Source: Gracilinanus agilis
Lineage: Eukaryota
Direction of reading: 5' to 3'
Assembly (NCBI RefSeq): GCF_016433145.1
Contig: NC_058132.1
Location: 86,797,272-86,861,271 of the forward strand
DNA length: 64,000 nucleotides
Part shown: piece after piece, positions 7,634 to 54,619 of the stretch
Position numbering within the stretch: position 1 is the first letter of the stretch
Layout: every line of letters starts with the position of its first letter
Made by a program: the position numbers and the translations under genes
The notes under the pieces: model-generated
The model's input: only the letters and a program-made list of their open reading frames with translations
Database searches by the model: none
Told to the model about the DNA's origin: nothing

Positions 7634-8590
7634 ATGGTGGGCAATGCCACTATCCCCAACTTCTCATCCTTTTTCTTGGTTGGTATTCCTGGTCTTGAAG
7701 TCTTCCACTGTTGGTTCAGCATCCCTGTCTGCCTTTTGTATGTCATGACTCTAATGGGGAATGGTCTCATTGTCCTTGTGATAAAAGAAGAACCAAGCCT
7801 TCATCAGCCCATGTTCTTTTTCCTTTGTATGCTAGCCTTTAATGATGTAGCTATTTCCTCAGCTATAGCCCCCAGGATGCTTGGCATATTTTGGTTGGAT
7901 GCTCATCTCATTGGATTTGAGGTTTGCTTGACCCAAATGTACTTAATCCACACTTTTTCCATTATTGAATCAGCTCTTTTGGTTGTCATGGCCTTTGACC
8001 GCTATGTTGCCATTTGCCATCCACTGCATTATGCCACCATCCTGACCACTCCTTTGGTCATCAGGTTAGGGCTGGTAAGTGTGGCTCGAGGTGCCATTAT
8101 GGTCTTGCCCTGTCCACTGCTTATTAAACGACTGATGTATTGTACTCAGAATGTTATACGGCATACCTACTGTGAACACATGGCTGTGGTGAAGCTTGCC
8201 TGCACTGATACCTACATAAACCGGAGCTATGGCATCTTTGTGGCTCTCTCAGTCATACTTCTGGACATTGGACTTATTTCTATGTCCTATGTCAAGATCC
8301 TTCAGGCTGTCTTCCGACTCTCCTCTAAGGAATCCCGCTCTAAGGCCCTGGGCACTTGTGCTGCCCATATCTGTACTATCCTCTTCACTTATATACCTGC
8401 CCTGTTTAGTTTCCTCACCCACCGCATTGGCAAGAGGGTGCCCCCATCCATTCACATTATCTTTGCCAGTATATATCTCCTGGTGCCACCTGCAGTCAAT
8501 CCATTAGTCTATGGTGTAAAGACCAAGCAGATTCGTGACCAAGTGGTCATGCTTTTCCTCAGGAAAAAGGATAAGGACTCCAAGCATTAG
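7634..8590 (+). CDS. Class I olfactory receptor, OR52 family, intact, 318 aa
   Basis: Motifs FFLVGIPGLE, LHQPMFFFL, MAFDRYVAICHPLHY, HTYCEHMAVVKLAC, KALGTC, PPAVNPLVYGVKTKQIR; Kozak accATGG; N-glycosylation sequon NAT. Confidence 0.97.
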   Translation: MVGNATIPNFSSFFLVGIPGLEVFHCWFSIPVCLLYVMTLMGNGLIVLVIKEEPSLHQPMFFFLCMLAFNDVAISSAIAPRMLGIFWLDAHLIGFEVCLTQMYLIHTFSIIESALLVVMAFDRYVAICHPLHYATILTTPLVIRLGLVSVARGAIMVLPCPLLIKRLMYCTQNVIRHTYCEHMAVVKLACTDTYINRSYGIFVALSVILLDIGLISMSYVKILQAVFRLSSKESRSKALGTCAAHICTILFTYIPALFSFLTHRIGKRVPPSIHIIFASIYLLVPPAVNPLVYGVKTKQIRDQVVMLFLRKKDKDSKH

Positions 8591-10491: not shown

Positions 10492-11854
10492 TCAAGAGAG
10501 CAATAGAAATGCCCCCCACCCCAGTAATGATGTGTATGTTGGAGAAAAAGGCTTAACCTGTATGGGGGAATGTCCAAAAAGCATCTCAAATGGTGAGATG
10601 TGTAGATCTCCCCTAAGTGTGCTATGAGGATAAAACAAAGCTAAGGGGAGAACTTTAGGCCATTTCAAATGAGTCTCAGTGCACAATTTTCCAATCATAT
10701 TTTTAAGACCTCTATTCATTCCCTCAAGTTGGCCTGAGCTCTGGGGTGTGATAGGGTACATGGAATTGGGGAGTGATCCCCAAACAAGAATGAATCTGAG
10801 ACAAAACAGGAAAAGCATTAGGAAAGGCTTCTAGCCATCTGGTCAGCTGATCCACTATGACCAAGCAAACTTTATAATAATATCCATCCTTAGGCATGGT
10901 AATAAAGTCATTTTGTAAATGCTCAAAAGGTGTGTAAGTCAGAGGATGCCAACCAAAAACCTTGCCTCAAAAAGCATGTTGATTATATGCCTGGCAAGTG
11001 GAACAGGCTGCACACACTTTAGAGGCTATGGTCATTATACCAGGACTATACATACTTTTTTGACAGTCTACAATACCCTGAGTGCCAAAGTGACCGTTCT
11101 TATGAATGGATAAGCATATTTGTTGATAAAAAACATCTAGGCAGTAGGGTTTTCCTTCAGATGACACCCATACCCCATTGATCTGTTTTGATTTAAACTT
11201 TTGTTTCCATTTTTCCACTTCCCGTTCATTATACAAGAGAAATAAATTTGAATTGTTAATAGTTGTTGAAGTTAAAATTAATTCAGGTCCTCCTAAGATA
11301 GCAAGCTTTGCTGCTGTATCTGCTTGGTGTTTCCCTCTAAAAACAGGTCTGCCCACCTGTATGGGCAGAGCAATGAACTAGAGCTAGAGCTTCAGGTAAC
11401 TGGAGAGCAGAAAGCACTTCATTAATGATCTCTTCATTTTTGATACATTTTCCAGCAGAGGTTTAAAATCCTCTTTGGAACCATAGCATACCCACTGCAT
11501 GACATATTCCAAAGGAATATCTAGAGTCTTCCTTGCCCTTGGCAATTATACAGGTATGTTTTAGAGCTTTCAGTTCTGTACCTTGAGCACTTATATTTGA
11601 GGACAGTGAAGCTGACCACACAGTGGAGAATTCTGTGACTACAACAGCAGCAGTATAGTGTATGCCATCCCTCATAAAAGAAGAGCCATCATTAAATAAA
11701 AATAAGGCTGTGTTGTCTAGAAGAGTGTTTAAGAGATTATCTTGAAGCTTTTCATCCATGGACACTAAAGATTTATAATTGTGCAATGGTTCTCTTGAGA
11801 CTGGTAAATCTGGAAGCAAGATAGTAGGATTAAGGACTGTACAGTGTTTCAAGG
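10492..11854 (-). mobile_element. ERV pol: RNase H and integrase, degenerate, with an apparent internal deletion in the integrase core
   Basis: LFNDGSSFM (RNase H), zinc-finger remnants IHKNGHFG...VCAACSTCQAYN, integrase EHLQNDFITMP..IVDQLTRWLEAF and PQSSGQLEGMNRGLK. Confidence 0.9.
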
Positions 11855-13886
11855 TGTAAGAAATGAAATGGATGTAAAAGGATAGATTTAAAAATATTAT
11901 GGTTTTAAAAGATTTATTAACAGCCATTAGAAAAATAAAGCCACGTTCCCTTTTAAGAGTTAGTTTGAAAGTCCCACCATACCTCCACCACTATGCTGCT
12001 TCAGCTGGAAAAGAGAGAGTTTTCTTCCAGGCACCTCCCTTTTATTCTTCTCTCTATGTTATTACACTTCCTGTCTATGTGATTACACAAGAGGAATCAT
12101 GGGAAATGTAGTTTGAAAGAGCCCTAAATATCCACAGGAAGTTTAGCTCAGGGACCTCAAAATTAGTTCAAGGACTCCCCAATTTCCAATATCACATTCC
12201 ACCTTGAGATGCAGAGGACAGACTGGTCTTCCTGATGGATCTTGTAAAACATAACACATAACTAGCTTATAATTACAGAAATTTGGGGATAAAAAGAAAA
12301 GAGGACAAAAACCAATGATTGCGAGGCACATTGACAAAAGCCAATTAGGGGGCAGTCCCCTTCAGCATAAGAGTGTACATTCAAAACAAATGCATTCAAC
12401 TCCCCATATTTCAATCAACTGTACCCCAAAGTTCATTTTGGATCTTCTTGATTCAGTGTATGTTCATAGTGCCTTCTCCAAACAGGTTTGTTGTCTGGAT
12501 TCTGGGAAGATGGCAAATTTCTTATCCTGAAATTACTCTCAAAAGAATTTAAACTTTACATTATAGATTATAAAAAATACATTCCCTTCTGAGGAGAATA
12601 ACACATTCCCTTCTGAAATTACTCTCGAAAGAATTTTACATTATAGATTATAATAAAGACATTCTGATTATAAAATATACATACCCACCCTGAGGAGGGT
12701 TAAGGCCAATGCCCAGATCAGCTAAGGATACATGGCTGAGTTATGGGGTTGTGTGAATAATTGGCAAAAGAAATTTAAAAAAAATTTAAAAATCTGAATA
12801 AAAGAGAAAAAACTTGTGAATTAAATGTAAAATATCAAAGTTTTATGTGCAAAAATGTAGGAAAAAATAAACTTATAACAGGTCCTTGAATCAAGGTCCA
12901 ATTAAAGTGATTTAAGTAATTGTGCAATTACCCAATTCAATAGCCAGGACTACAGACAACACTTATAAGAAAAATAAAAGGACCAAATTTGTGTGCAAGG
13001 GAAGTGTCTTTGCCCGATTTGATTTGCCTGCACTTCTCAGAAATAGGGTGAGCCAGGATGATGGCCAACCTTTTGCACTTGACTAGGATTAAACTCAGGG
13101 AAGTCTGGCCTCTAACATATGTAAGAAAAGCTGCAACCCTGAACCCCAATCGCTAAGTTCAAGTCCTTCAGTTTTGGCATAGAAGTTCAACAATCCTACC
13201 TGGATTGATATTGGTCTGTTTTGACCTTGTGCTGCTAGGCACTGTGCAGTTTCTCACCAATCCCATTTGGGACTGGGTGGTCTTCTTGACCTTGTAGATC
13301 TTTTGTTCCCTTCTCCTGGCATCTGACAGAATTGTTAATTACAGTGCCTAATATTTGCCAATAATTGGCAGGTTACCATAGACTAAGGCTTTGGGGTATG
13401 CATTAATATTATAGTAGTTATATATATATATATTAAACTTATGTTATTGTATATATATTATTGTAAAATCAAAAAGATTAATATTGATTATATGTACTTT
13501 AAGTACAAAATGAGAAAAAAGGAAAAAGAGTCAATTATTCTATTAAAAAAACAAAAAGAAAAGAAATAAGAAAATTAAAAATTTATGGAAAAATACAATG
13601 TTTTCAAGCAAAAAATGAGAGCAAAAAAACACTTAAATACTGTATTGCACATAGAAGGGAAAAAATAATAAAAGAATGTTTTAAAAATCAAAATACATAT
13701 AGCTTAGAATTAGTGAAAGGTTTTTCACCCAAAAATGAGATACATTTCTTTCTAAGCTTTTCCATGAACTCCTGTGAGTGTAAATCTTTTTCATAAAATA
13801 GCAGAAATTTATAATGCAATTCAAATAAAGTACCCAATTTTCCAAAATTACAATAACATAAAAATTTCCAAAATTACAATAACACA
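11855..13886 (-). mobile_element. ~2.03-kb solo-LTR-like element inserted into the ERV pol
   Basis: TGT...ACA termini; 4-bp TSD AAGG at 11851-11854 and 13887-13890; internal tandem repeats; AATAAA on the minus strand near 11915. Confidence 0.75.
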
Positions 13887-21869: not shown

Positions 21870-22090
21870 ATGACAGCCACTTCACAGATATTAACTCATT
21901 TGATTCTCACAACAACCCTGTGTCATGAATACTATTGTTACCCCTATTTTCCATTTGAGGCAATTGAGGCAAACAAAGATTAAGTTATTCACTTATGGCC
22001 ATACAACTATTAAATGTCTGGGTTTGAATTTGAATTCAGATGTTCCTGCCTCCAGGACCAGCACTCTATATATTGCATCCCTTAGTTGCC
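21870..22090 (-). mobile_element. MIR-type SINE ending just upstream of the acceptor at 22130
   Basis: ctcatttgattctcacaacaaccctg...tgaggcaaac...gaatttgaattcag..cctgcctccagg..cagcactctat. Confidence 0.65.
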
Positions 22091-22111
22091 TAGAAAGCCA
22101 AAGACTGAATT

Positions 22112-22130
22112 AATTTCCTTTCTCTTTCAG
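22112..22130 (+). promoter_or_regulatory. 3' splice acceptor of the first coding exon of the split OR
   Basis: aatttcctttctctttcag ending at 22130, 25 nt upstream of the ATG at 22156. Confidence 0.75.
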
Positions 22131-22155
22131 CCAGGCTCCAACCCACTCCCCATCC

Positions 22156-22404
22156 ATGGCTTTGTCACTCAACAGCTCTTCAACCCAGGTGACTGAGTTT
22201 CTGATGATCTGCTTTCCAGGCATGCAGGACACACAACACTGGCTGTCAGTGCCCCTGACCCCTCTATTAGTGCTGGCCCTGGGGGCCAATGTGGTGCTAT
22301 TGCTGGCCATCCATCAGGAAGCTTCTTTGCATGAGCCCATGTATTACCTTTTGGCTATCCTCTCCCTCTTGGATGTCATACTCTGTCTAACTGTCATCCC
22401 TAAG
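22156..22404 (+). CDS. OR56-family receptor, coding exon 1 (aa 1-83, N-terminus to end of TM2)
   Basis: MALSLNSSSTQVTEFLMICFPG...LHEPMYYLLAILSLLDVILCLTVIPK followed by donor AAG|GTAAGG; 249 nt, phase 0. Confidence 0.9.
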
Positions 22405-22705
22405 GTAAGGTCCTTGATCTATCAACTGCTTCACAGCATGTGGACATAACTGGCCTTACTGACTTTTGTCATCATAAATCTCAGGTCCTGAAATATTTCC
22501 AAAATCCCTAAGGCCACTCATTAATCACTTTCCCCAAATTCATTTAGTTATTGCTGTCCCTATGATTCCTTCACCTTGACCTCACAGAGAGTTATCTCAT
22601 ATTAGTAGTATTTTCAAATGACAAAAGGAAAGGGAGAAAAAATCAGATCTAATTATTAGCTCATGGATTTTTAAAAATGTCTTTTGAGTTCTGGTTGTCT
22701 TAGAC

Positions 22706-22925
22706 CAATGATGTCAAAATCATTTAGAAATGAGGGTCCCAAACCATACATAAGCATCCCTGCAGGTATATGCTGTCTTAGAAAGCCACATGTTGTCTTA
22801 TGTTGTCATTACCTATATTTTATGCTACTTTTAATGATTTTGTGAAATATTTTCTAGTTAAATTTTAATGTAGTTTCAGTTGCACTAAAAGTGTTATGAG
22901 TAACTATACATCTGACAACTCTGTC
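22706..22925. mobile_element. Degenerate hAT-type MITE inside the intron
   Basis: Imperfect inverted ends caatgatgtcaaaa...tctgacaactctg. Confidence 0.35.
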
Positions 22926-23142
22926 TTAAACCATAGAGACACCTGAAGTTGCTTTAACTTTGGTCCATAATTTCTGTTTGGGGAGGTCTGAGAGGTTGTG
23001 AGAATCAGAGGAAAAGTCTAATCCTCCATTTGATTGATCACACAACCCAGAAATCTTACCATTACTTATGGAGCTTAGAGCTGAATAAAGAATAGCATCA
23101 AAAATAAAGTTATTGCTCTGGGGAACAACAAAAATAATTTGA

Positions 23143-23480
23143 GAATCACAGAATCAGAGAATTTGAGAGTTGTAAGGGACCTCGATGGTTAGGTAGTCCA
23201 TTGCATTTGAAATATTTAAAATATTTCAATATTATTTTTAATTTAATTTTTTTTAATTTCAAAAATGTTCTAAAGCATTTTTAAATTACATGTGAAAAAG
23301 AATCTCCTTAATAAAATACTTGCTAAATGACCATACTCTCATTTGTTTGAACACCTCCACTAATGTAGAACCTACAACATTCCAAAGCAGGTCATTACAC
23401 TTTGGTTCCTGCTTGACAGGAACTTTTCACTTACTTCAAGTCTTAATTTGCCTCTTTTGAATTGATATTGTTCCTATTTA
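23143..23480 (-). mobile_element. L3/CR1 fragment inside the intron, interrupted by AT-rich sequence
   Basis: gaatcacagaatc..gagagttgtaagggacctc; gaacacctccactaatg..aacctacaacattccaaagcagg. Confidence 0.55.
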
Positions 23481-23734
23481 TGCCAAGGAAAAAGCTTCTT
23501 TTCCTATTCAGCCATTCTAATGTTTAAAGACCTGTATTGTATTCTCCTGCCCTCCCTCCCAACCAGGTGATCCTCATCCCCAGATCACTCTTTTCTAGGA
23601 GAAAAATAGAAGTAATTATCACCAAGTAGATGAATATTAGGGTAGTAGAAAGAGTAAATGAGATCAAATCCTTAAAGCATTTTCTGTGCAACGTATAGTC
23701 TCCTAGAACTGTACTTAAAGGATGTAACTTGACT

Positions 23735-23832
23735 AAAGACAAATAACCAATACACATTAGAGATGAGACTTGGACCCATGGCTGGTCTGACTTTGAGATC
23801 AGCTCTCTATCCACTATACCATACTGCCTCTC
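23735..23832 (-). mobile_element. MIR head fragment inside the intron
   Basis: gacttggaccca..tctgactttgagatcagctctctatccactataccatactgcctctc. Confidence 0.55.
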
Positions 23833-24365
23833 ATGTTATCCTAACTCTTCTCACAATACCATTGTGTCCTTGAATAAGTCCCCTAACTGGTCAGGTTTAG
23901 AGTTAGAGTTGTTAGTTGTTAGAGTTGGACTAGATAATATTGAATATTTCTCGCAGCCTCCAAAATTATGATACCATGAATGTAGCTCAAACTAAGGTCA
24001 TAAAGCCTAGAAAAGTTCAGGACAATGGAAATGTTCAGATTGGGAACATCTCCCAGTGTGGGCAAGTTGGGATTTGAATATTGAAAAGGATGATGGATAT
24101 AGATAGGAATAGGAAATTGGGAAGGGAATATTGGAAGGACCATAATTAATGTCAGAAGGATAGGCATTGGCAAGCCACATAAAAGATAGAGAGGGGAGAG
24201 TTGGGGTTAAGGAGATACATCAGGGAGAAAAGTGAGATAAAATTTGAATGTATTTTAGTGCAAAATTGGATTAATCTAATGGAAATTTGGAAGCTGCTAT
24301 GGCTTCCTAACCTACTGTTGATGTTAAAATATAAGAACAATATTTGAGAATGATGATTCTGGCAG

Positions 24366-25061
24366 GTCCTGCTCATCTTCTGGTTCAACATGAAGCCCAT
24401 TAGCTTTACAGGCTGCTTCCTACAGATGTTTGTCATGAATACCTTCTTGCCCATGGAGTCATCCACCTTTCTGATTATGGCTTATGATCGCTATGTTGCT
24501 ATCTGTCATCCCCTGCACTACCCATCCATCATCACCGAGCAGTTTGTAGTCAAGGCTGCCATATTCATTATCTTCCGCAACTTACTGGCCACATTGCCCA
24601 CTCCAATCTTGGCTGCCCGACTGGACTACTGTGCAGGAAATGTCATAGAAAACTGTATATGTGCCAACATCTCTGTGGCTCGGCTCTCCTGTGGGGATAT
24701 CCGTCTCAACAAACTCTACCAGTTTGTGAGTGTCTGGTGCCTCCTGGGTTCTGACTTGGTGCTCATTTTGCTTTCCTACTGCTTTATCTTGAGGGCTGTG
24801 CTGAGGCTACAATCTGGAGGAGCAGCCACAAAGGCTCTAAGCACCTGCGGCTCTCACCTGATCCTCATCCTCTTCTTTTATACACTTTTACTGGTCTTCA
24901 TCTTTACCAATAAGGCTGGCAAAAAGGTACCTGCTGAAGTGCCCATCCTTCTCAATGTCCTGCACCACCTCATCCCACCAGCCCTCAATCCCATTGTCTA
25001 TGGAGTTCGCACTCAAGAGATCAAGCATGGCATCTTGAAATTACTGAAGTATCAAAAGTGA
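24366..25061 (+). CDS. OR56-family receptor, coding exon 2 (aa 84-314)
   Basis: VLLIFWFNMKPISF...MAYDRYVAICHPLHY...ENCICANISV...KALSTCGSH...PPALNPIVYGVRTQEIK; open to TGA at 25059-25061. Confidence 0.92.
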   Translation, partial: VLLIFWFNMKPISFTGCFLQMFVMNTFLPMESSTFLIMAYDRYVAICHPLHYPSIITEQFVVKAAIFIIFRNLLATLPTPILAARLDYCAGNVIENCICANISVARLSCGDIRLNKLYQFVSVWCLLGSDLVLILLSYCFILRAVLRLQSGGAATKALSTCGSHLILILFFYTLLLVFIFTNKAGKKVPAEVPILLNVLHHLIPPALNPIVYGVRTQEIKHGILKLLKYQK

Positions 25062-31577: not shown

Positions 31578-32557
31578 TTTATTTTATGTTTTTTTAATCA
31601 CTGCTCTGATTTGGAGCTAAGTACTGATACAAAATACACATCTGTATCAATTCTCAGACATCCAATAGAATGATTTAAGAGACTGGTTTTTTTGCCTGCT
31701 TCTACTTTAAAAATATTTTTATAACACCACTTTGATTTCATATTTATAATTTATATGATTTATAATATCATTTGATTTGAGAATCAAATATAGGAAACAT
31801 TTTCAGATTAAGATGACATCTAAAATCCGTGAAGAACCGAAATACATATGCAAATAATTCCCACCCTTATATATATATATATGCATATATATATATATTG
31901 CATATGTGTATATATGGATACTGTGTAAGGGGAGTGATCAGGTTAGTCATCATACCCTAAATCAATAGGGACACAAAATAGAACTGAGTACCCTAAAACT
32001 TGACTGATGGAGATAGAAAGACAGAGAGAGAGAACAAGAGGAGAGAGATGACAATATGAGAGTACAGCACATCAGTAACAAAAATGATTATATCTTTTGA
32101 CTTTGTGAAATCATCGATAGTGATCCAATCCAAAAATATTAAACAGAAAAGAGGAAAATTTACATAAAATGATTCATGTAAATAGGGTAAATAATACTGT
32201 ATAAAAATACTTTTATAAAATAATAACTGTACAAATCTATTACAAATAGATTTTCAGTAGCAAAACAATTAGAAATAACTTAAATATTCAGCAATTGGAA
32301 AATGACCAAATAAATTATGATGCTTAATCATTATTTTTATCATTAATTCAAGTAATGGCATATTGTGTTACCCCCAAAACAATAAATATGAAGCATACAA
32401 GCAAAAATGAAAGATGTTCAGGAAGTGATACAAAGTCAAATTAGAAAAACTAGAACATCATGATCATGATTATTAAGAAAGAGATGAAGTAGAAGGAGAT
32501 AAAAGAGGAGGAAGAGAGGGAGGAGGACCCATTGTATATAGAACTTTCAATCTCACT

Positions 32558-33505
32558 TCACAGACCCTTCCTCAGTAACTTCAGAATGCCCTGCTTGATC
32601 TCTTGGGTCCGGACACCATAAACAATGGGATTGAGAGCTGCAGGGATGACATGGTGCAAGACATTGAGCAGGATGGGCACATCAGGAGACACCATCTTCT
32701 TAGCCACATGAGTGAGAACAAAGACCAGCAGGATGGTGCTGAAGAAGAGGATGAGGATGAAGTGGGAACCACATGTACTCAGGGCCTTGGCTGCAGCCCC
32801 CTTGGCCTTAAGCCTCAGCACAGCTCGAAGAATGAAGGAATAGGAGAGGAAGATGAGGACGAGGTCAGAACCCAGCAGTGTCCATCCCCCTGCAAACTGG
32901 TAGAGGCGGTTGATTGTAACATCATTACAAGACAGTTTTGATACAGATAAGTTGGCACAGATGCAATTCTCTATGACATTGGAATGGCAGTAGTTCAGCC
33001 TAGCTGAGAGAATGGGTATAGGCACTGTGAAGAAGACATTTCGGGCCAGTATAAAGAGGGCAGCCTTGGCAACAAATTCATCTGTGATAATGGCTGGATA
33101 TCGAAGTGGGTGGCAAATGGCTACATATCTATCATATGCCATTATTAAAAAGGTACAAGACTCCATGGCCAAGAAACAATTCATGATATACATCTGGAGG
33201 AAACAGGCAGGGAAGCTTATAGGTCTGAGGTCAAACCAGAAGATGAGCAGGACTTTAGGGATGACCGTGAGGCAGAGCACAATGTCCAGCAGGGAGAGCA
33301 GGCTGAGCAGGTAGTACATGGGTTCATGAAGAGAGGCCTCCAGCCGAATGGTGATCAGAAGGGTGGCATTGGCTCCCATAGCCAAGAGGAAGAGCAGGCT
33401 CAGGGGCAGGGAAAGCCAGCGCTGCCAGCTTGGAGATCTGACAAAACAATTCAGGAGGAATTCAGAGACTTCAGTTGGAGAGGAGCTATTGCTGGACAAT
33501 ATCAT
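32558..33505 (-). CDS. OR56A3-like: Class I olfactory receptor, OR56A3-like, copy 1, intact, 315 aa
   Basis: EFLLNCFVRSPSWQ.WLSLPLSLLFLLAMGAN, MAYDRYVAICHPLRY, ENCICANLSVSKLSC, YQFAGGWTLLGSDL, THVAKK.VSPDVP, PAALNPIVYGVRTQEIKQG match OR56A3 as I recall it. Confidence 0.95.
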   Translation of the reverse strand: MILSSNSSSPTEVSEFLLNCFVRSPSWQRWLSLPLSLLFLLAMGANATLLITIRLEASLHEPMYYLLSLLSLLDIVLCLTVIPKVLLIFWFDLRPISFPACFLQMYIMNCFLAMESCTFLIMAYDRYVAICHPLRYPAIITDEFVAKAALFILARNVFFTVPIPILSARLNYCHSNVIENCICANLSVSKLSCNDVTINRLYQFAGGWTLLGSDLVLIFLSYSFILRAVLRLKAKGAAAKALSTCGSHFILILFFSTILLVFVLTHVAKKMVSPDVPILLNVLHHVIPAALNPIVYGVRTQEIKQGILKLLRKGL

Positions 33506-41061: not shown

Positions 41062-42599
41062 TTTTTTTTCAATATAAATAGTTTTAATTTTTTAAAATTA
41101 AGTTTATTTGTTTAATTAATTTAGAATATTTTCCCATGGTTAGATAATTCATGTTCTTTTCCTCCCTTCCTCCAAACTCCATCCCATAGTCAAAGAACAA
41201 TTCCATTGGGTTTTACATGTGTCATTGATCAAGACCTATTTCCATATTATTAATATTTGCAATATAGTGATTGTTTAGAGTCTATATCCCCAATCATATC
41301 CCCATCAAACCATGTGATCAAGCAGTTGTTTTTCTTCTGTGTTTCTACTCCCACAGTTCTTTCTCTGGATGTAAATAGCATTCTTTCTCCTAAGTCCCTC
41401 AGAATTGTCCTGGATCATTGCATTGCTACTAGTAAAGAAGTCTATTACATTTGATTGTGCCAAAGTGTATCAGTCTCTGTGTACAATGTTCCCCTGGTTC
41501 TGCTCCTTTCACTCTGCATCACTTCCTGGAGGTCTTTCCAGTTCACATGGAATTCCTCCAGTTCATTATTCCTTTCAGCACAATAGTATTCCAAAACCAA
41601 CAGATACCACAATTTCTTCAGCCATTCCCCAATCAATGGACACACCCTCATTTTCCAATTTTTTGCCACCACAAAGAATGCTGCTATAAATATTTTTGTA
41701 CAAGTCTTTTTCCTTATTATCTCTTTCAGGTATAAACCCAACAGTGGTATTGCTGGATCAAAGGCAAGCAGTCTTTTAAAGCCCTTTGGGCATAGTTCCA
41801 AATTGACTTCCAGAATGATTGGATCAATTCACAAGTCTACCAGCAATGCATTAATGCCTCAATTTTGTCACATTCCTTCCAACATTTATTACTTTCCTTT
41901 GCTGTCATATTAGCAAATCTGCTAGGTATGAAGTGGTACCTTGGAGTTGTTTTGATTTGAATTTTTCTAATTATAAGAGATTTAGAACACTTTTTCATGT
42001 ACATATTGATAGTTTTCATTTCTTTATCTGAAAATTGCCTATTCATGTCCCTTACCAATTTATTAATTGGGAATGGCTTGATTTTTTTATGCAATTGATG
42101 TAGCTCCTTATAAATTTGAATAATTAGACTTTTGTCAGAGGTTTTTGTTATAAAGATTTTTTCCCAATTTGTTGCTTCCCTTCTAATTTTGGTTGCATTA
42201 CAAAACCTTTTAAATTTAATGTAATCAAAATTATTCATCTTACATTTTGTAATTATTCTCTGTCTCTTGCTTGGTCTTAAAATCTTTCCTTTTCCATAGA
42301 TCTGAAAGTAAACTATTCTATGTTCACTTAATTTACTTATAGTTTCCTTCTTTATATTTAAGTCATTCACACATTCTGAATTTATCTTGGTGTAGGGTGT
42401 GAGATGTTGATCTAAACCTAATCCTTCCCATACTGTTTTCCAAGTTCCCCAGTAATTTTTGTCAAATAGTGGGTTTTTGTCCCAAAAGCTGAGATAGTTG
42501 GGTTTATAGTACACTACATTGCTGAGGTAATTTACCCCAAGTCTATTCCATTTATACTTCCTTCTGTCTCAGCCAGGACTATATTGTTTTTTTTTTTTG

Positions 42600-53449: not shown

Positions 53450-53671
53450 GTATAGACCATAGTGTTCAGTTGGACAGGTGTTATGGAAGGATATAAAGGA
53501 GTAAGGAGGAAAGGCTAAAAGAACTATGAAAAAGGTTATGGGAAAAATAAGGCCTCTCAATCATATTCTACTTTGGACAAGTTTGGGGATTTGGGTTCTT
53601 AGCTTTGAAGTTTTCCCTATTGTTGAGCCATCTAACTCCAAGAAAGCAGAAAGTCCCCCCTCAATCCTACT

Positions 53672-54619
53672 TCACAGACCCTTCCTCAGTAACTTCAGAA
53701 TGCCCTGCTTGATCTCTTGGGTCCGGACACCATAAACAATGGGATTGAGAGCTGCAGGGATGACATGGTGCAAGACATTGAGCAGGATGGGCACATCAGG
53801 AGACACCATCTTCTTAGCCACATGAGTGAGAACAAAGACCAGCAGGATGGTGCTGAAGAAGAGGATGAGGATGAAGTGGGAACCACATGTACTCAGGGCC
53901 TTGGCTGCAGCCCCCTTGGCCTTAAGCCTCAGCACAGCTCGAAGAATGAAGGAATAGGAGAGGAAGATGAGGACGAGGTCAGAACCCAGCACTGTCCATC
54001 CCCCAGCAAACTGAAGAAGGCGATTCACTGTTATATCATCAGAGGAAAGCTTTGATACAGATAAGTTGGCACAGATACAGTTTTCAATGACATTGGAATG
54101 GCAGTAGTGCAGCCTAGCTGAGAGGATAGGGACCAGAATAGTGAGAAGAGCATTCCGGCCCACTATGAAAATGGCAGCTTTCACAACAAATTGGTCAGTA
54201 ATGATAGATGGGTAACGAAGGGGATGGCAAATGGCCACATAACGGTCATATGCCATGACCAGGAAAGTACATGACTCCATGGCCAGGAAGCAGTTCATGA
54301 CATACATCTGGAGGAAGCAAGCAGCAAAGCTAACAGATCTGAGGTCAAACCAGAAGATGAGCAGGACCTTAGGGATGACTGTGAGGCAGAGCACAATGTC
54401 CAGCAGGGAGAGCAGGCTGAGCAAATAGTACATGGGCTCATGCAGAGATGCCTCCAGACGGATGGTGGTTAGAAGTATGGCATTTGCCCCCATGGCAAGG
54501 AGGAAGAGCAGACTTAGGGGTAGGGATAGCCAGCGTTGCCAGTTTGGAGATCTGACAAAGCAATTCAAGAAGAATTCAGACACCTCTGTCAAAGAAGAGC
54601 AATTGCTGGTCAGCGCCAT
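53672..54619 (-). CDS. OR56A3-like: Class I olfactory receptor, OR56A3-like, copy 2, open, 315 aa, with a Cys-to-Ser change in extracellular loop 2 (ECL2)
   Basis: Same OR56A motifs as copy 1; KLSSDD instead of KLSCND. Confidence 0.93.
   Translation of the reverse strand: MALTSNCSSLTEVSEFFLNCFVRSPNWQRWLSLPLSLLFLLAMGANAILLTTIRLEASLHEPMYYLLSLLSLLDIVLCLTVIPKVLLIFWFDLRSVSFAACFLQMYVMNCFLAMESCTFLVMAYDRYVAICHPLRYPSIITDQFVVKAAIFIVGRNALLTILVPILSARLHYCHSNVIENCICANLSVSKLSSDDITVNRLLQFAGGWTVLGSDLVLIFLSYSFILRAVLRLKAKGAAAKALSTCGSHFILILFFSTILLVFVLTHVAKKMVSPDVPILLNVLHHVIPAALNPIVYGVRTQEIKQGILKLLRKGL

What the first reader, a model, noticed from the sequence alone, without database searches (positions are those of the whole stretch)
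22156..25061. Intact olfactory receptor whose coding region is split by an intron after TM2
Seen: two partial OR ORFs 2 kb apart join by a phase-0 GT-AG splice (AAG|gtaagg ... ctggcag|GTC) into a 314-aa receptor with no stop or frameshift. It aligns without gaps across the junction to the two intronless OR56A paralogues (CLTVIPK|VLLIFWF). Exon 1 also has its own strong upstream acceptor at 22130. Established: mammalian OR coding regions are almost always single-exon, so automated pipelines would call these two pseudogene fragments. Inference: a functional gene with a gained intron in the middle of the 7TM bundle. From memory, not verifiable here, manual curation of mouse and human ORs has reported a small set of two-exon coding ORs, possibly including OR56A-region loci. 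The class may therefore be known, while a marsupial orthologue would date the intron to before the therian split.
Basis: partly seen in the sequence, partly recalled or inferred. Interest (0 to 1): 0.85.

Follow-up and report, generated by a model that had tools for sequence, protein, structure and literature searches.

The report
Known two-exon olfactory receptor, opossum copy
This is an intact smell-receptor gene whose coding region is split by one old intron. The same split gene is already published for mouse and already annotated in this opossum genome, so it is real but not new.

Summary
Exon 1 (22156-22404, 83 aa) and exon 2 (24366-25061, 231 aa plus stop) join in phase 0 across a 1961-bp GT-AG intron. 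The product is a 314-aa class I olfactory receptor (OR) with no stop. The two pieces cover positions 5-50 and 51-277 of the Pfam OR model (7tm_4) with no gap.

The interpretation also holds, but the gene is already known.
- The joined protein is 100% identical to RefSeq XP_044521787.1 (olfactory receptor 56A4-like, Gracilinanus agilis). That gene spans exactly 2906 bp, the same as 22156-25061.
- The intron sits at the same codon boundary in Tasmanian devil, koala, bat, bison, elephant and mouse.
- The mouse locus (311 aa, intron after aa 82, about 1180 bp) matches Olfr680-ps1, whose close paralogue is Olfr682-ps1. Barnes et al. 2020 list both as split OR genes.
- Both exons are under strong purifying selection (dN/dS 0.02-0.26).
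- The last 23-29 intron bases and the acceptor upstream of the ATG are conserved between marsupials and eutherians.

The intron was therefore gained before the marsupial-eutherian split. That dating is the only small addition here. I found no usable RNA evidence for this species. The "RNA?" runs behave like genomic DNA of a relative.

The parts
22111..22130 (+). 3' splice acceptor of the 5'-UTR intron: pyrimidine tract plus CAG, 25 nt upstream of the ATG
   Evidence: 16 of 20 bases are pyrimidines. The motif TGAAT...YYTTTCAG is aligned and conserved in window, Sarcophilus, koala, Myotis, Bison, Elephas and Mus.
22131..22155 (+). 5'-UTR part of coding exon 1 (inferred)
   Evidence: It lies between the conserved acceptor and the conserved ATG. 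No transcript evidence in this species.
22156..22404 (+). Coding exon 1: 83 aa covering the N-terminus with an NSS glycosylation site, TM1, intracellular loop 1 (LHEPMYY) and TM2, ending at K83
   Evidence: Translation. Pfam 7tm_4 profile 5-50. Hydrophobic stretches at aa 35-47 and 68-85. dN/dS 0.04-0.26.
22405..24365 (+). Phase-0 GT-AG intron of 1961 bp. The donor AAG|GTAAGG is strong. The acceptor has a poor pyrimidine tract. The intron holds dispersed-repeat fragments at about 22820-22980, 23140-23220 and 23780-23860.
   Evidence: Sequence. Same position in six other mammals. Depth spikes over the repeat fragments. An independent DNA contig spans 22594-24480 at 99.5% identity. About 70-73% alignable to the Sarcophilus intron.
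24337..24365 (+). Conserved 3' end of the intron (TTTGAGAATGATGATTCTGGCAG). It is probably the branch point plus acceptor.
   Evidence: This is the only intron block alignable to eutherians: 93% over 29 nt with Myotis and 91% over 23 nt with Elephas. It is also present in mouse. Only 7 of the last 20 bases are pyrimidines.
24366..25061 (+). Coding exon 2: 231 aa plus TGA, covering extracellular loop 1 to the C-terminus, with MAYDRY, KALSTCGSH and NPIVY motifs
   Evidence: Translation. Pfam 7tm_4 profile 51-277, 209 bits. dN/dS 0.02-0.10. 83-94% identity to 314-aa 'OR56A4-like' proteins across therians.

Best explanation
This is the Gracilinanus agilis (agile gracile opossum) member of an old lineage of class I, family-56 olfactory receptors whose coding region lies on two exons. 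Its mouse representatives are Olfr680-ps1 and Olfr682-ps1, now named Or56a41-ps1-type.

The gene has at least three exons: one or more 5'-UTR exons upstream of the window part studied, a 274-nt internal exon, and a terminal exon. The internal exon runs from the acceptor at 22130 to the donor after 22404 and encodes the N-terminus through TM2. The terminal exon encodes ECL1 through the C-terminus.

Removing the 1961-bp phase-0 GT-AG intron gives a normal 314-aa seven-helix receptor. The intron entered an AAG|GTC proto-splice site of an intronless OR56A-type ancestor. This happened after that ancestor duplicated and before marsupials and eutherians split. The intron has been kept ever since.

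Shown: the structure, its conservation, purifying selection and the existing annotation. Inferred: splicing and expression in this species, and the insertion mechanism.
For: - Exact phase-0 join and contiguous Pfam coverage.
- The joined protein is 100% identical over 314 aa to XP_044521787.1 of G. agilis, whose gene span is 2906 bp, equal to 22156-25061.
- The intron lies after the same lysine codon, with GT..AG, in Sarcophilus (2380 bp), koala (4336 bp), Myotis (777 bp), Bison (983 bp), Elephas (783 bp) and mouse (1184 bp, 311-aa ORF).
- The mouse figures match Barnes et al. 2020, Supplementary File 3. That file gives Olfr680-ps1 as 311 aa with an intron after aa 82 of 1180 bp, and Olfr682-ps1 as 311 aa with an intron after aa 82 of 1136 bp. 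[quoted passage not shown] The preprint legend describes the Olfr682-ps1 split ORF. It implies transcript support for it only by contrast, stating that Olfr680-ps1 lacks transcriptional evidence.
- Pairwise dN/dS is 0.04-0.26 for exon 1 and 0.02-0.10 for exon 2, with dS up to about 2.
- In the tree, the split-type proteins are separated from the intronless 56A1/A3/A4 clade by a branch with 100% SH-aLRT support and length 0.43. The window sits in a marsupial subclade with 99% support.
- The upstream acceptor and the intron's 3' end are conserved.
Against: - There is no transcript evidence for this species. The only runs offered as 'RNA?' (X1, X3, X5, from a relative about 93% identical) give contigs that run unspliced across both exon-intron borders. 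They show low, even depth over the intron and no 22404>24366 joint, so they look like genomic DNA and are uninformative.
- The acceptor has a poor pyrimidine tract (7 of 20).
- Sarcophilus P0001 and koala P0026, used for the intron and dN/dS checks, are out-paralogues within the split lineage rather than 1:1 orthologues.
- No receptor function has been tested for any member. Mouse Olfr682-ps1 is a polymorphic pseudogene.
Confidence: 0.9

Rival explanations
1. A dead receptor: an ordinary single-exon OR56A gene broken by a 2-kb insertion, so that the two ORFs are decaying pseudogene fragments.
For: Most mammalian OR coding regions are single-exon. The intron contains dispersed-repeat fragments. 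ORF-based callers report only exon-2 pieces of 221-231 aa in several species.
Against: The interruption is at the identical codon boundary with GT-AG in seven mammals spanning about 160 My. Neither exon has a stop or frameshift in any of them. dN/dS is 0.02-0.26 in both exons. The donor, the acceptor and the intron's 3' end are conserved.
Confidence: 0.02
2. The gene is structurally intact but silent or not correctly spliced in this species. On this reading it is a recent regulatory loss, and the annotation rests on homology alone.
For: No spliced read or contig was found. Mouse Olfr680-ps1 also lacks transcript evidence. The acceptor's pyrimidine tract is weak.
Against: The protein differs from the Monodelphis orthologue at only 2 of 314 residues (99.4%), and the window protein has a zero-length terminal branch in the tree. 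That argues for continuing constraint. All splice signals are intact.
Confidence: 0.06
3. Only exon 2 is used. It would be translated from the internal ATG at 24390 into a 223-aa truncated protein, with exon 1 an unrelated relic.
For: An ATG-initiated ORF runs 24390-25061. Equivalent 221-223-aa products are deposited for other species.
Against: That product would lack TM1 and TM2 and could not form a seven-helix receptor. Exon 1 is itself under purifying selection (dN/dS 0.04-0.26). Exon 1 is flanked by a conserved acceptor and a conserved donor, which makes sense only for an internal coding exon.
Confidence: 0.02

Closest known systems
RefSeq XP_044521787.1, olfactory receptor 56A4-like [Gracilinanus agilis] (P0130)
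   Same: 100% identical over all 314 aa to the spliced product of the window. The annotated gene span is 2906 bp, identical to 22156-25061. It is the same gene.
   Different: Nothing in the sequence differs. It is an automatic (Gnomon) model, and I could not see what transcript support it has.
Mouse Olfr680-ps1 / Olfr682-ps1 (UniProt name: olfactory receptor family 56 subfamily A member 41, pseudogene 1), split OR genes of Barnes et al. 2020 (PMC7055050)
   Same: Same intron position, after the lysine at the end of TM2 (aa 82 in mouse, 83 here). Same conserved acceptor sequence. 86% protein identity. Same clade in the tree.
   Different: Mouse has a 311-aa ORF, a donor GTCAGA rather than GTAAGG, and an intron of about 1.1-1.2 kb rather than 1.96 kb. 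Olfr682-ps1 is a polymorphic pseudogene in the reference strain. The paper names cow, dog and sheep but no marsupial.
Intronless OR56A3/OR56A1/OR56A4 genes, including the two paralogues in this window (32558-33505 and 53672-54619, minus strand)
   Same: Same family, 70% identity, and a gapless alignment across the junction. Their DNA at the site (CCTAAG/A GTCCTG) is the uninterrupted proto-splice site.
   Different: They have a single coding exon and are separated from the split lineage by a branch with 100% support.
Other mid-CDS split ORs: Olfr240-ps1/OR5BS1P (intron after aa 254/257) and Olfr592 (aa 312)
   Same: They are rare cases where the intron is not in the N-terminal tail or TM1. More than 90% of split ORs have it there.
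   Different: They belong to unrelated OR families, have different intron positions and arose by independent gains.

Membership tests
Olfactory receptor (Pfam 7tm_4, class I, family 56) | Match to the 7tm_4 profile above the gathering score over its full length | tested here: met
   Exon 1 scores 34.1 bits on profile 5-50. Exon 2 scores 209.4 bits on profile 51-277. The cut-off is 27.
Olfactory receptor (Pfam 7tm_4, class I, family 56) | Signature motifs: N-terminal NxS/T, PMYY at the TM2 start, MAYDRY after TM3, KALSTCGSH before TM6, NPxxY in TM7, and the conserved ECL1/ECL2 cysteines | tested here: met
   All are readable in the translations and aligned with the intact paralogues.
Olfactory receptor (Pfam 7tm_4, class I, family 56) | Seven predicted transmembrane helices | tested here: inconclusive
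   A crude Kyte-Doolittle scan gave clear peaks for TM1, TM2, TM4, TM5 and TM6 only. The gapless alignment to intact ORs implies seven. No dedicated TM predictor or structure model was run.
Olfactory receptor (Pfam 7tm_4, class I, family 56) | Odorant-evoked signalling and expression in olfactory sensory neurons | not testable with these tools
   No expression data were usable and no functional assay was possible.
Split OR genes as defined by Barnes et al. 2020 | A full-length ORF of 300-350 aa interrupted by one intron | tested here: met
   314 aa, with one phase-0 GT-AG intron.
Split OR genes as defined by Barnes et al. 2020 | Initiation methionine and splice junction conserved in orthologues of other mammals | tested here: met
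   The junction is identical in Sarcophilus, koala, Myotis, Bison, Elephas and Mus. The ATG is aligned in all of them.
Split OR genes as defined by Barnes et al. 2020 | Transcript (RNA-seq or cDNA) support for the junction | tested here: inconclusive
   No joint was found in the runs available, which look genomic. For mouse, the preprint legend implies transcript support for Olfr682-ps1 only by contrast with Olfr680-ps1, which lacks it.
Orthology group of mouse Olfr680-ps1/Olfr682-ps1 | Same clade in a protein tree, distinct from the intronless 56A1/A3/A4 genes | tested here: met
   A 100% SH-aLRT branch separates the two groups. Mouse mCG64556 falls inside the split group.
Orthology group of mouse Olfr680-ps1/Olfr682-ps1 | Conserved synteny (same position in the OR56A cluster) | not tested
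   Only the window's own neighbours were seen (OR56A3-like paralogues and an OR at 7634-8590). The flanks of the other species were not compared.

The most novel reading that the evidence does not exclude
The intron is a single, datable intron gain into an AAG|GTC proto-splice site that predates the marsupial-eutherian split. Its pyrimidine-poor but strictly conserved last 23-29 bases would be more than a plain acceptor. They could be a regulatory element that makes this receptor's expression depend on a special or regulated splicing step, which would explain why the intron has never been lost in about 160 My.
Probability: 0.1. Interest if true: 0.5.

Novelty: already known. Interest (0 to 1): 0.22.

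Why it matters
The finding confirms that the rule of intronless OR coding regions has stable, ancient exceptions. Repertoire counts made with single-exon mining pipelines will miss this receptor or score it as a pseudogene. The one small addition to the literature is the dating. The aa-82/83 intron of the Olfr680/682 lineage is shared by didelphid, dasyurid and diprotodont marsupials and by Laurasiatheria, Afrotheria and rodents. It was therefore gained before the therian split and is one of the few datable intron gains in mammals. The gene itself, its structure and its annotation in this genome are already public.

Tried and rejected
1. Target-site duplication. The window has AGGTCCT at both intron ends and a TAAGG tandem repeat at the donor. 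Sarcophilus reads GGCCCT at the donor and GTCTTG at exon 2, and eutherians share only AGGTC. Four of those five bases are forced by GT-AG plus the AG|GT proto-splice site. This is no real evidence for a TSD or a transposon origin.

2. RNA evidence. The second ran, but the 'RNA?' runs behave like genomic DNA of a relative, so there is no joint and no conclusion.

3. P0031, a 315-aa uninterrupted ORF on a 1.6-kb Logan contig, looked like a possible spliced mRNA or intronless orthologue. It is an assembly chimera: a class II OR N-terminus fused at MAYDRYVAICHPL to this gene's C-terminal part.

4. Looking for the intron's repeats elsewhere in the window by blastn gave no hits. Only the last 29 nt of the intron align to eutherian introns, so the origin of the inserted DNA cannot be recovered.

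5. Monotreme or sauropsid orthologues. None appeared among the 120 best hits. The tools give no way to search those genomes, so the older bound on the intron's age stays open.

6. Exceptional conservation. The split gene is 87-90% identical between marsupial and eutherian. The intronless 56A3 paralogue is also 81-84% identical, so the difference is modest.

Full report
**What is in the sequence**

Exon 1 runs 22156-22404 (249 nt, 83 codons) and ends CCT AAG, followed by GTAAGG. Exon 2 runs 24366-25061 (231 codons plus TGA) and is preceded by ...TTCTGGCAG. The join is in phase 0 and gives a 314-aa protein with no stop. Left unspliced, the exon-1 frame stops 14 codons into the intron (ORF 22156-22449).

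Pfam 7tm_4 covers profile positions 5-50 in exon 1 and 51-277 in exon 2, so nothing is missing or duplicated at the joint. The joined protein aligns without a gap at the joint to the two intronless paralogues in the window, 32558-33505(-) and 53672-54619(-), at 70% identity. Their DNA at that point is the uninterrupted CCTAAG/A-GTCCTG. A hydropathy scan puts the joint at the outer end of TM2 (stretch 68-85).

**Is it a live gene or a broken one?**

Exon 2 finds a tight group of 314-aa proteins named "olfactory receptor 56A4-like", at 83-94% identity, in marsupials and in many eutherian orders. Below them come the ordinary OR56A paralogues at about 70-75%.

For those whose DNA could be fetched, I located the exon borders by exact back-translation. 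All have one GT-AG intron after the same lysine codon:

| Species | Intron length |
|---|---|
| Myotis lucifugus | 777 bp |
| Sarcophilus | 2380 bp |
| Koala | 4336 bp |
| Bison | 983 bp |
| Elephas | 783 bp |
| Mouse (Celera chr7) | 1184 bp |

Gene spans in Monodelphis (3300 bp) and wombat (2969 bp) also imply an intron.

Pairwise Nei-Gojobori dN/dS is 0.04-0.26 for exon 1 and 0.02-0.10 for exon 2, with dS up to about 2. A disrupted pseudogene cannot keep two open frames, both splice sites and that level of constraint for about 160 My.

An independent DNA run of the same or a near-identical animal has a contig spanning 22594-24480 at 99.5% identity, so the intron is not an assembly artefact.

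**Other conserved signals**

The pyrimidine tract plus CAG that ends at 22130, 25 nt before the ATG, is aligned and conserved in all seven species. Coding exon 1 is therefore an internal exon of about 274 nt fed by a 5'-UTR exon, as in most OR genes.

Within the coding intron, only the last 23-29 nt (TTTGAGAATGATGATTCTGGCAG) align between marsupial and eutherian: 93% with Myotis, 91% with Elephas, and also present in mouse. That stretch has only 7 pyrimidines in its last 20 bases. Its conservation most simply reflects a branch point and acceptor that cannot afford changes (inference).

The donor is GTAAGG in marsupials and GTCAG in eutherians.

**Identity of the gene and of the genome**

The 90%-identity cluster around the Sarcophilus hit contains XP_044521787.1, "olfactory receptor 56A4-like [Gracilinanus agilis]". 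It is 100% identical over 314 aa to the window's spliced product. Its gene span in assembly GCA_016433145.1 is 2906 bp, exactly 22156-25061. The window is therefore from G. agilis, and RefSeq already carries this very two-exon model.

Identity to other marsupial copies is as follows:

| Species | Identity to the window protein |
|---|---|
| Monodelphis | 99.4% |
| Dromiciops | 97.1% |
| Wombat | 97.1% |
| Tammar wallaby | 96.5% |
| Dunnart | 96.5% |
| Bilby | 96.2% |
| Brushtail possum | 95.9% |
| A second devil copy | 95.9% |

Several marsupials hold two to four copies of the split gene. The devil (P0001) and koala (P0026) loci I dissected are out-paralogues inside the split lineage. This does not weaken the argument, since they carry the same intron.

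**Literature**

Barnes et al. 2020 (PMC7055050) curated 41 mouse and 13 human split OR genes. More than 90% have the intron in the N-terminal tail or TM1.

Their Supplementary File 3 lists Olfr680-ps1 (chr7, 311 aa, intron after aa 82, 1180 bp). [quoted passage not shown] The same file lists Olfr682-ps1 (311 aa, intron after aa 82, 1136 bp, polymorphic pseudogene).

The preprint's Supplementary Figure 5 legend describes Olfr682-ps1 as a split ORF with the junction conserved in dog, cow and sheep. It says that Olfr680-ps1 lacks transcript evidence.

My dissection of the mouse locus gives 82 aa in exon 1, a 311-aa ORF and a 1184-bp intron, with the same acceptor sequence as the opossum. UniProt names the mouse protein [quoted passage not shown]. 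Neither version of the paper mentions marsupials.

**Phylogeny and dating**

In a maximum-likelihood tree of 60 proteins, the intronless 56A1/A3/A4 genes form a clade with 100% SH-aLRT support (branch length 0.43), apart from the split-type proteins. Both sides contain marsupials and eutherians. The window's protein sits in a marsupial subclade with 99% support and has a zero-length terminal branch.

The duplication that founded the split lineage therefore predates the therian split, and so does the intron, because both therian branches share its position and 3' end. No monotreme or sauropsid orthologue was among the 120 best hits, and I could not search those genomes, so the older bound is open.

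**Mechanism of gain**

The paralogues show that the site was AAG|GTC, a textbook proto-splice site.

The window's AGGTCCT repeat at both intron ends is not shared by Sarcophilus. Across species only AGGTC is common to both ends, and four of those five bases are dictated by GT-AG plus the AG|GT site. I therefore do not claim a target-site duplication.

The intron now carries dispersed-repeat fragments, seen as depth spikes at about 22820-22980, 23140-23220 and 23780-23860. It is 70-73% alignable to the devil's intron. Nothing of the original insert can be recognised.

**RNA evidence**

None was usable. In the other, the runs flagged "RNA?" come from a relative about 93% identical. They give contigs that cross both exon-intron borders unspliced, with low even depth over the intron, which is the behaviour of genomic DNA. 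There was no 22404>24366 joint. This neither supports nor refutes splicing.

**Verdict**

The finding is real and correctly interpreted, but it is already known. It is a published split-OR lineage and an existing RefSeq model for this very locus. Those produce exon-2-only products of 221-231 aa, and OR is treated as a single-exon family. It does not hold for NCBI's general predictor.

The incremental point is that the intron is shared across Theria.

Noticed in passing
window 32555-32877 and 53669-53991 (minus strand): The two intronless OR56A3-like paralogues differ at 117 of the first 627 CDS positions. They are then identical for 323 nt, from CDS position 629 to 3 nt past the stop, which is a sharp gene-conversion tract.
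   Followed up: yes
P0032 (Castor canadensis 'OR56A3-like', 315 aa): The first 200 aa or so are split-lineage (85-95% to rodent and bat split ORs). The last 115 aa or so are OR56A3-like (85%). The breakpoint is near the same place as the conversion tract in the window's paralogues. This is either gene conversion between the split and intronless genes or a chimeric model.
   Followed up: partly
L005 (Logan contig of SRR19906171), protein P0031: A chimeric assembly contig. A class II OR N-terminus is fused at the MAYDRYVAICHPL motif to the C-terminal two-thirds of a split-lineage OR56A4-like gene. De Bruijn contigs of OR genes can jump between paralogues at this motif.
   Followed up: yes
marsupial genomes (cluster of P0001): The split gene has duplicated within marsupials with its intron retained. 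Sarcophilus has four copies, and Monodelphis, Gracilinanus and Macrotis have two each. The second Gracilinanus copy (P0136, 93.9%) is not in this window.
   Followed up: partly
window 7634-8590 (+): An intact 318-aa single-exon class I olfactory receptor (7tm_4, 352 bits), only 37% identical to the OR56A genes.
   Followed up: partly
window 11463-11927 (-) and 41837-42514 (-): ORFs of 154 and 225 aa. By eye they look like retroelement remnants, a pol-like fragment and a LINE ORF2-like fragment. They were not searched.
   Followed up: no
window 21888-22095: A MIR-like SINE lies just upstream of the 5'-UTR acceptor.
   Followed up: no
runs X1, X3, X5 laid on window 22100-24480: Runs labelled 'RNA?' give low, even coverage of intron and exons from a species about 93% identical to the window. 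They behave like genomic DNA, so the label is doubtful.
   Followed up: partly
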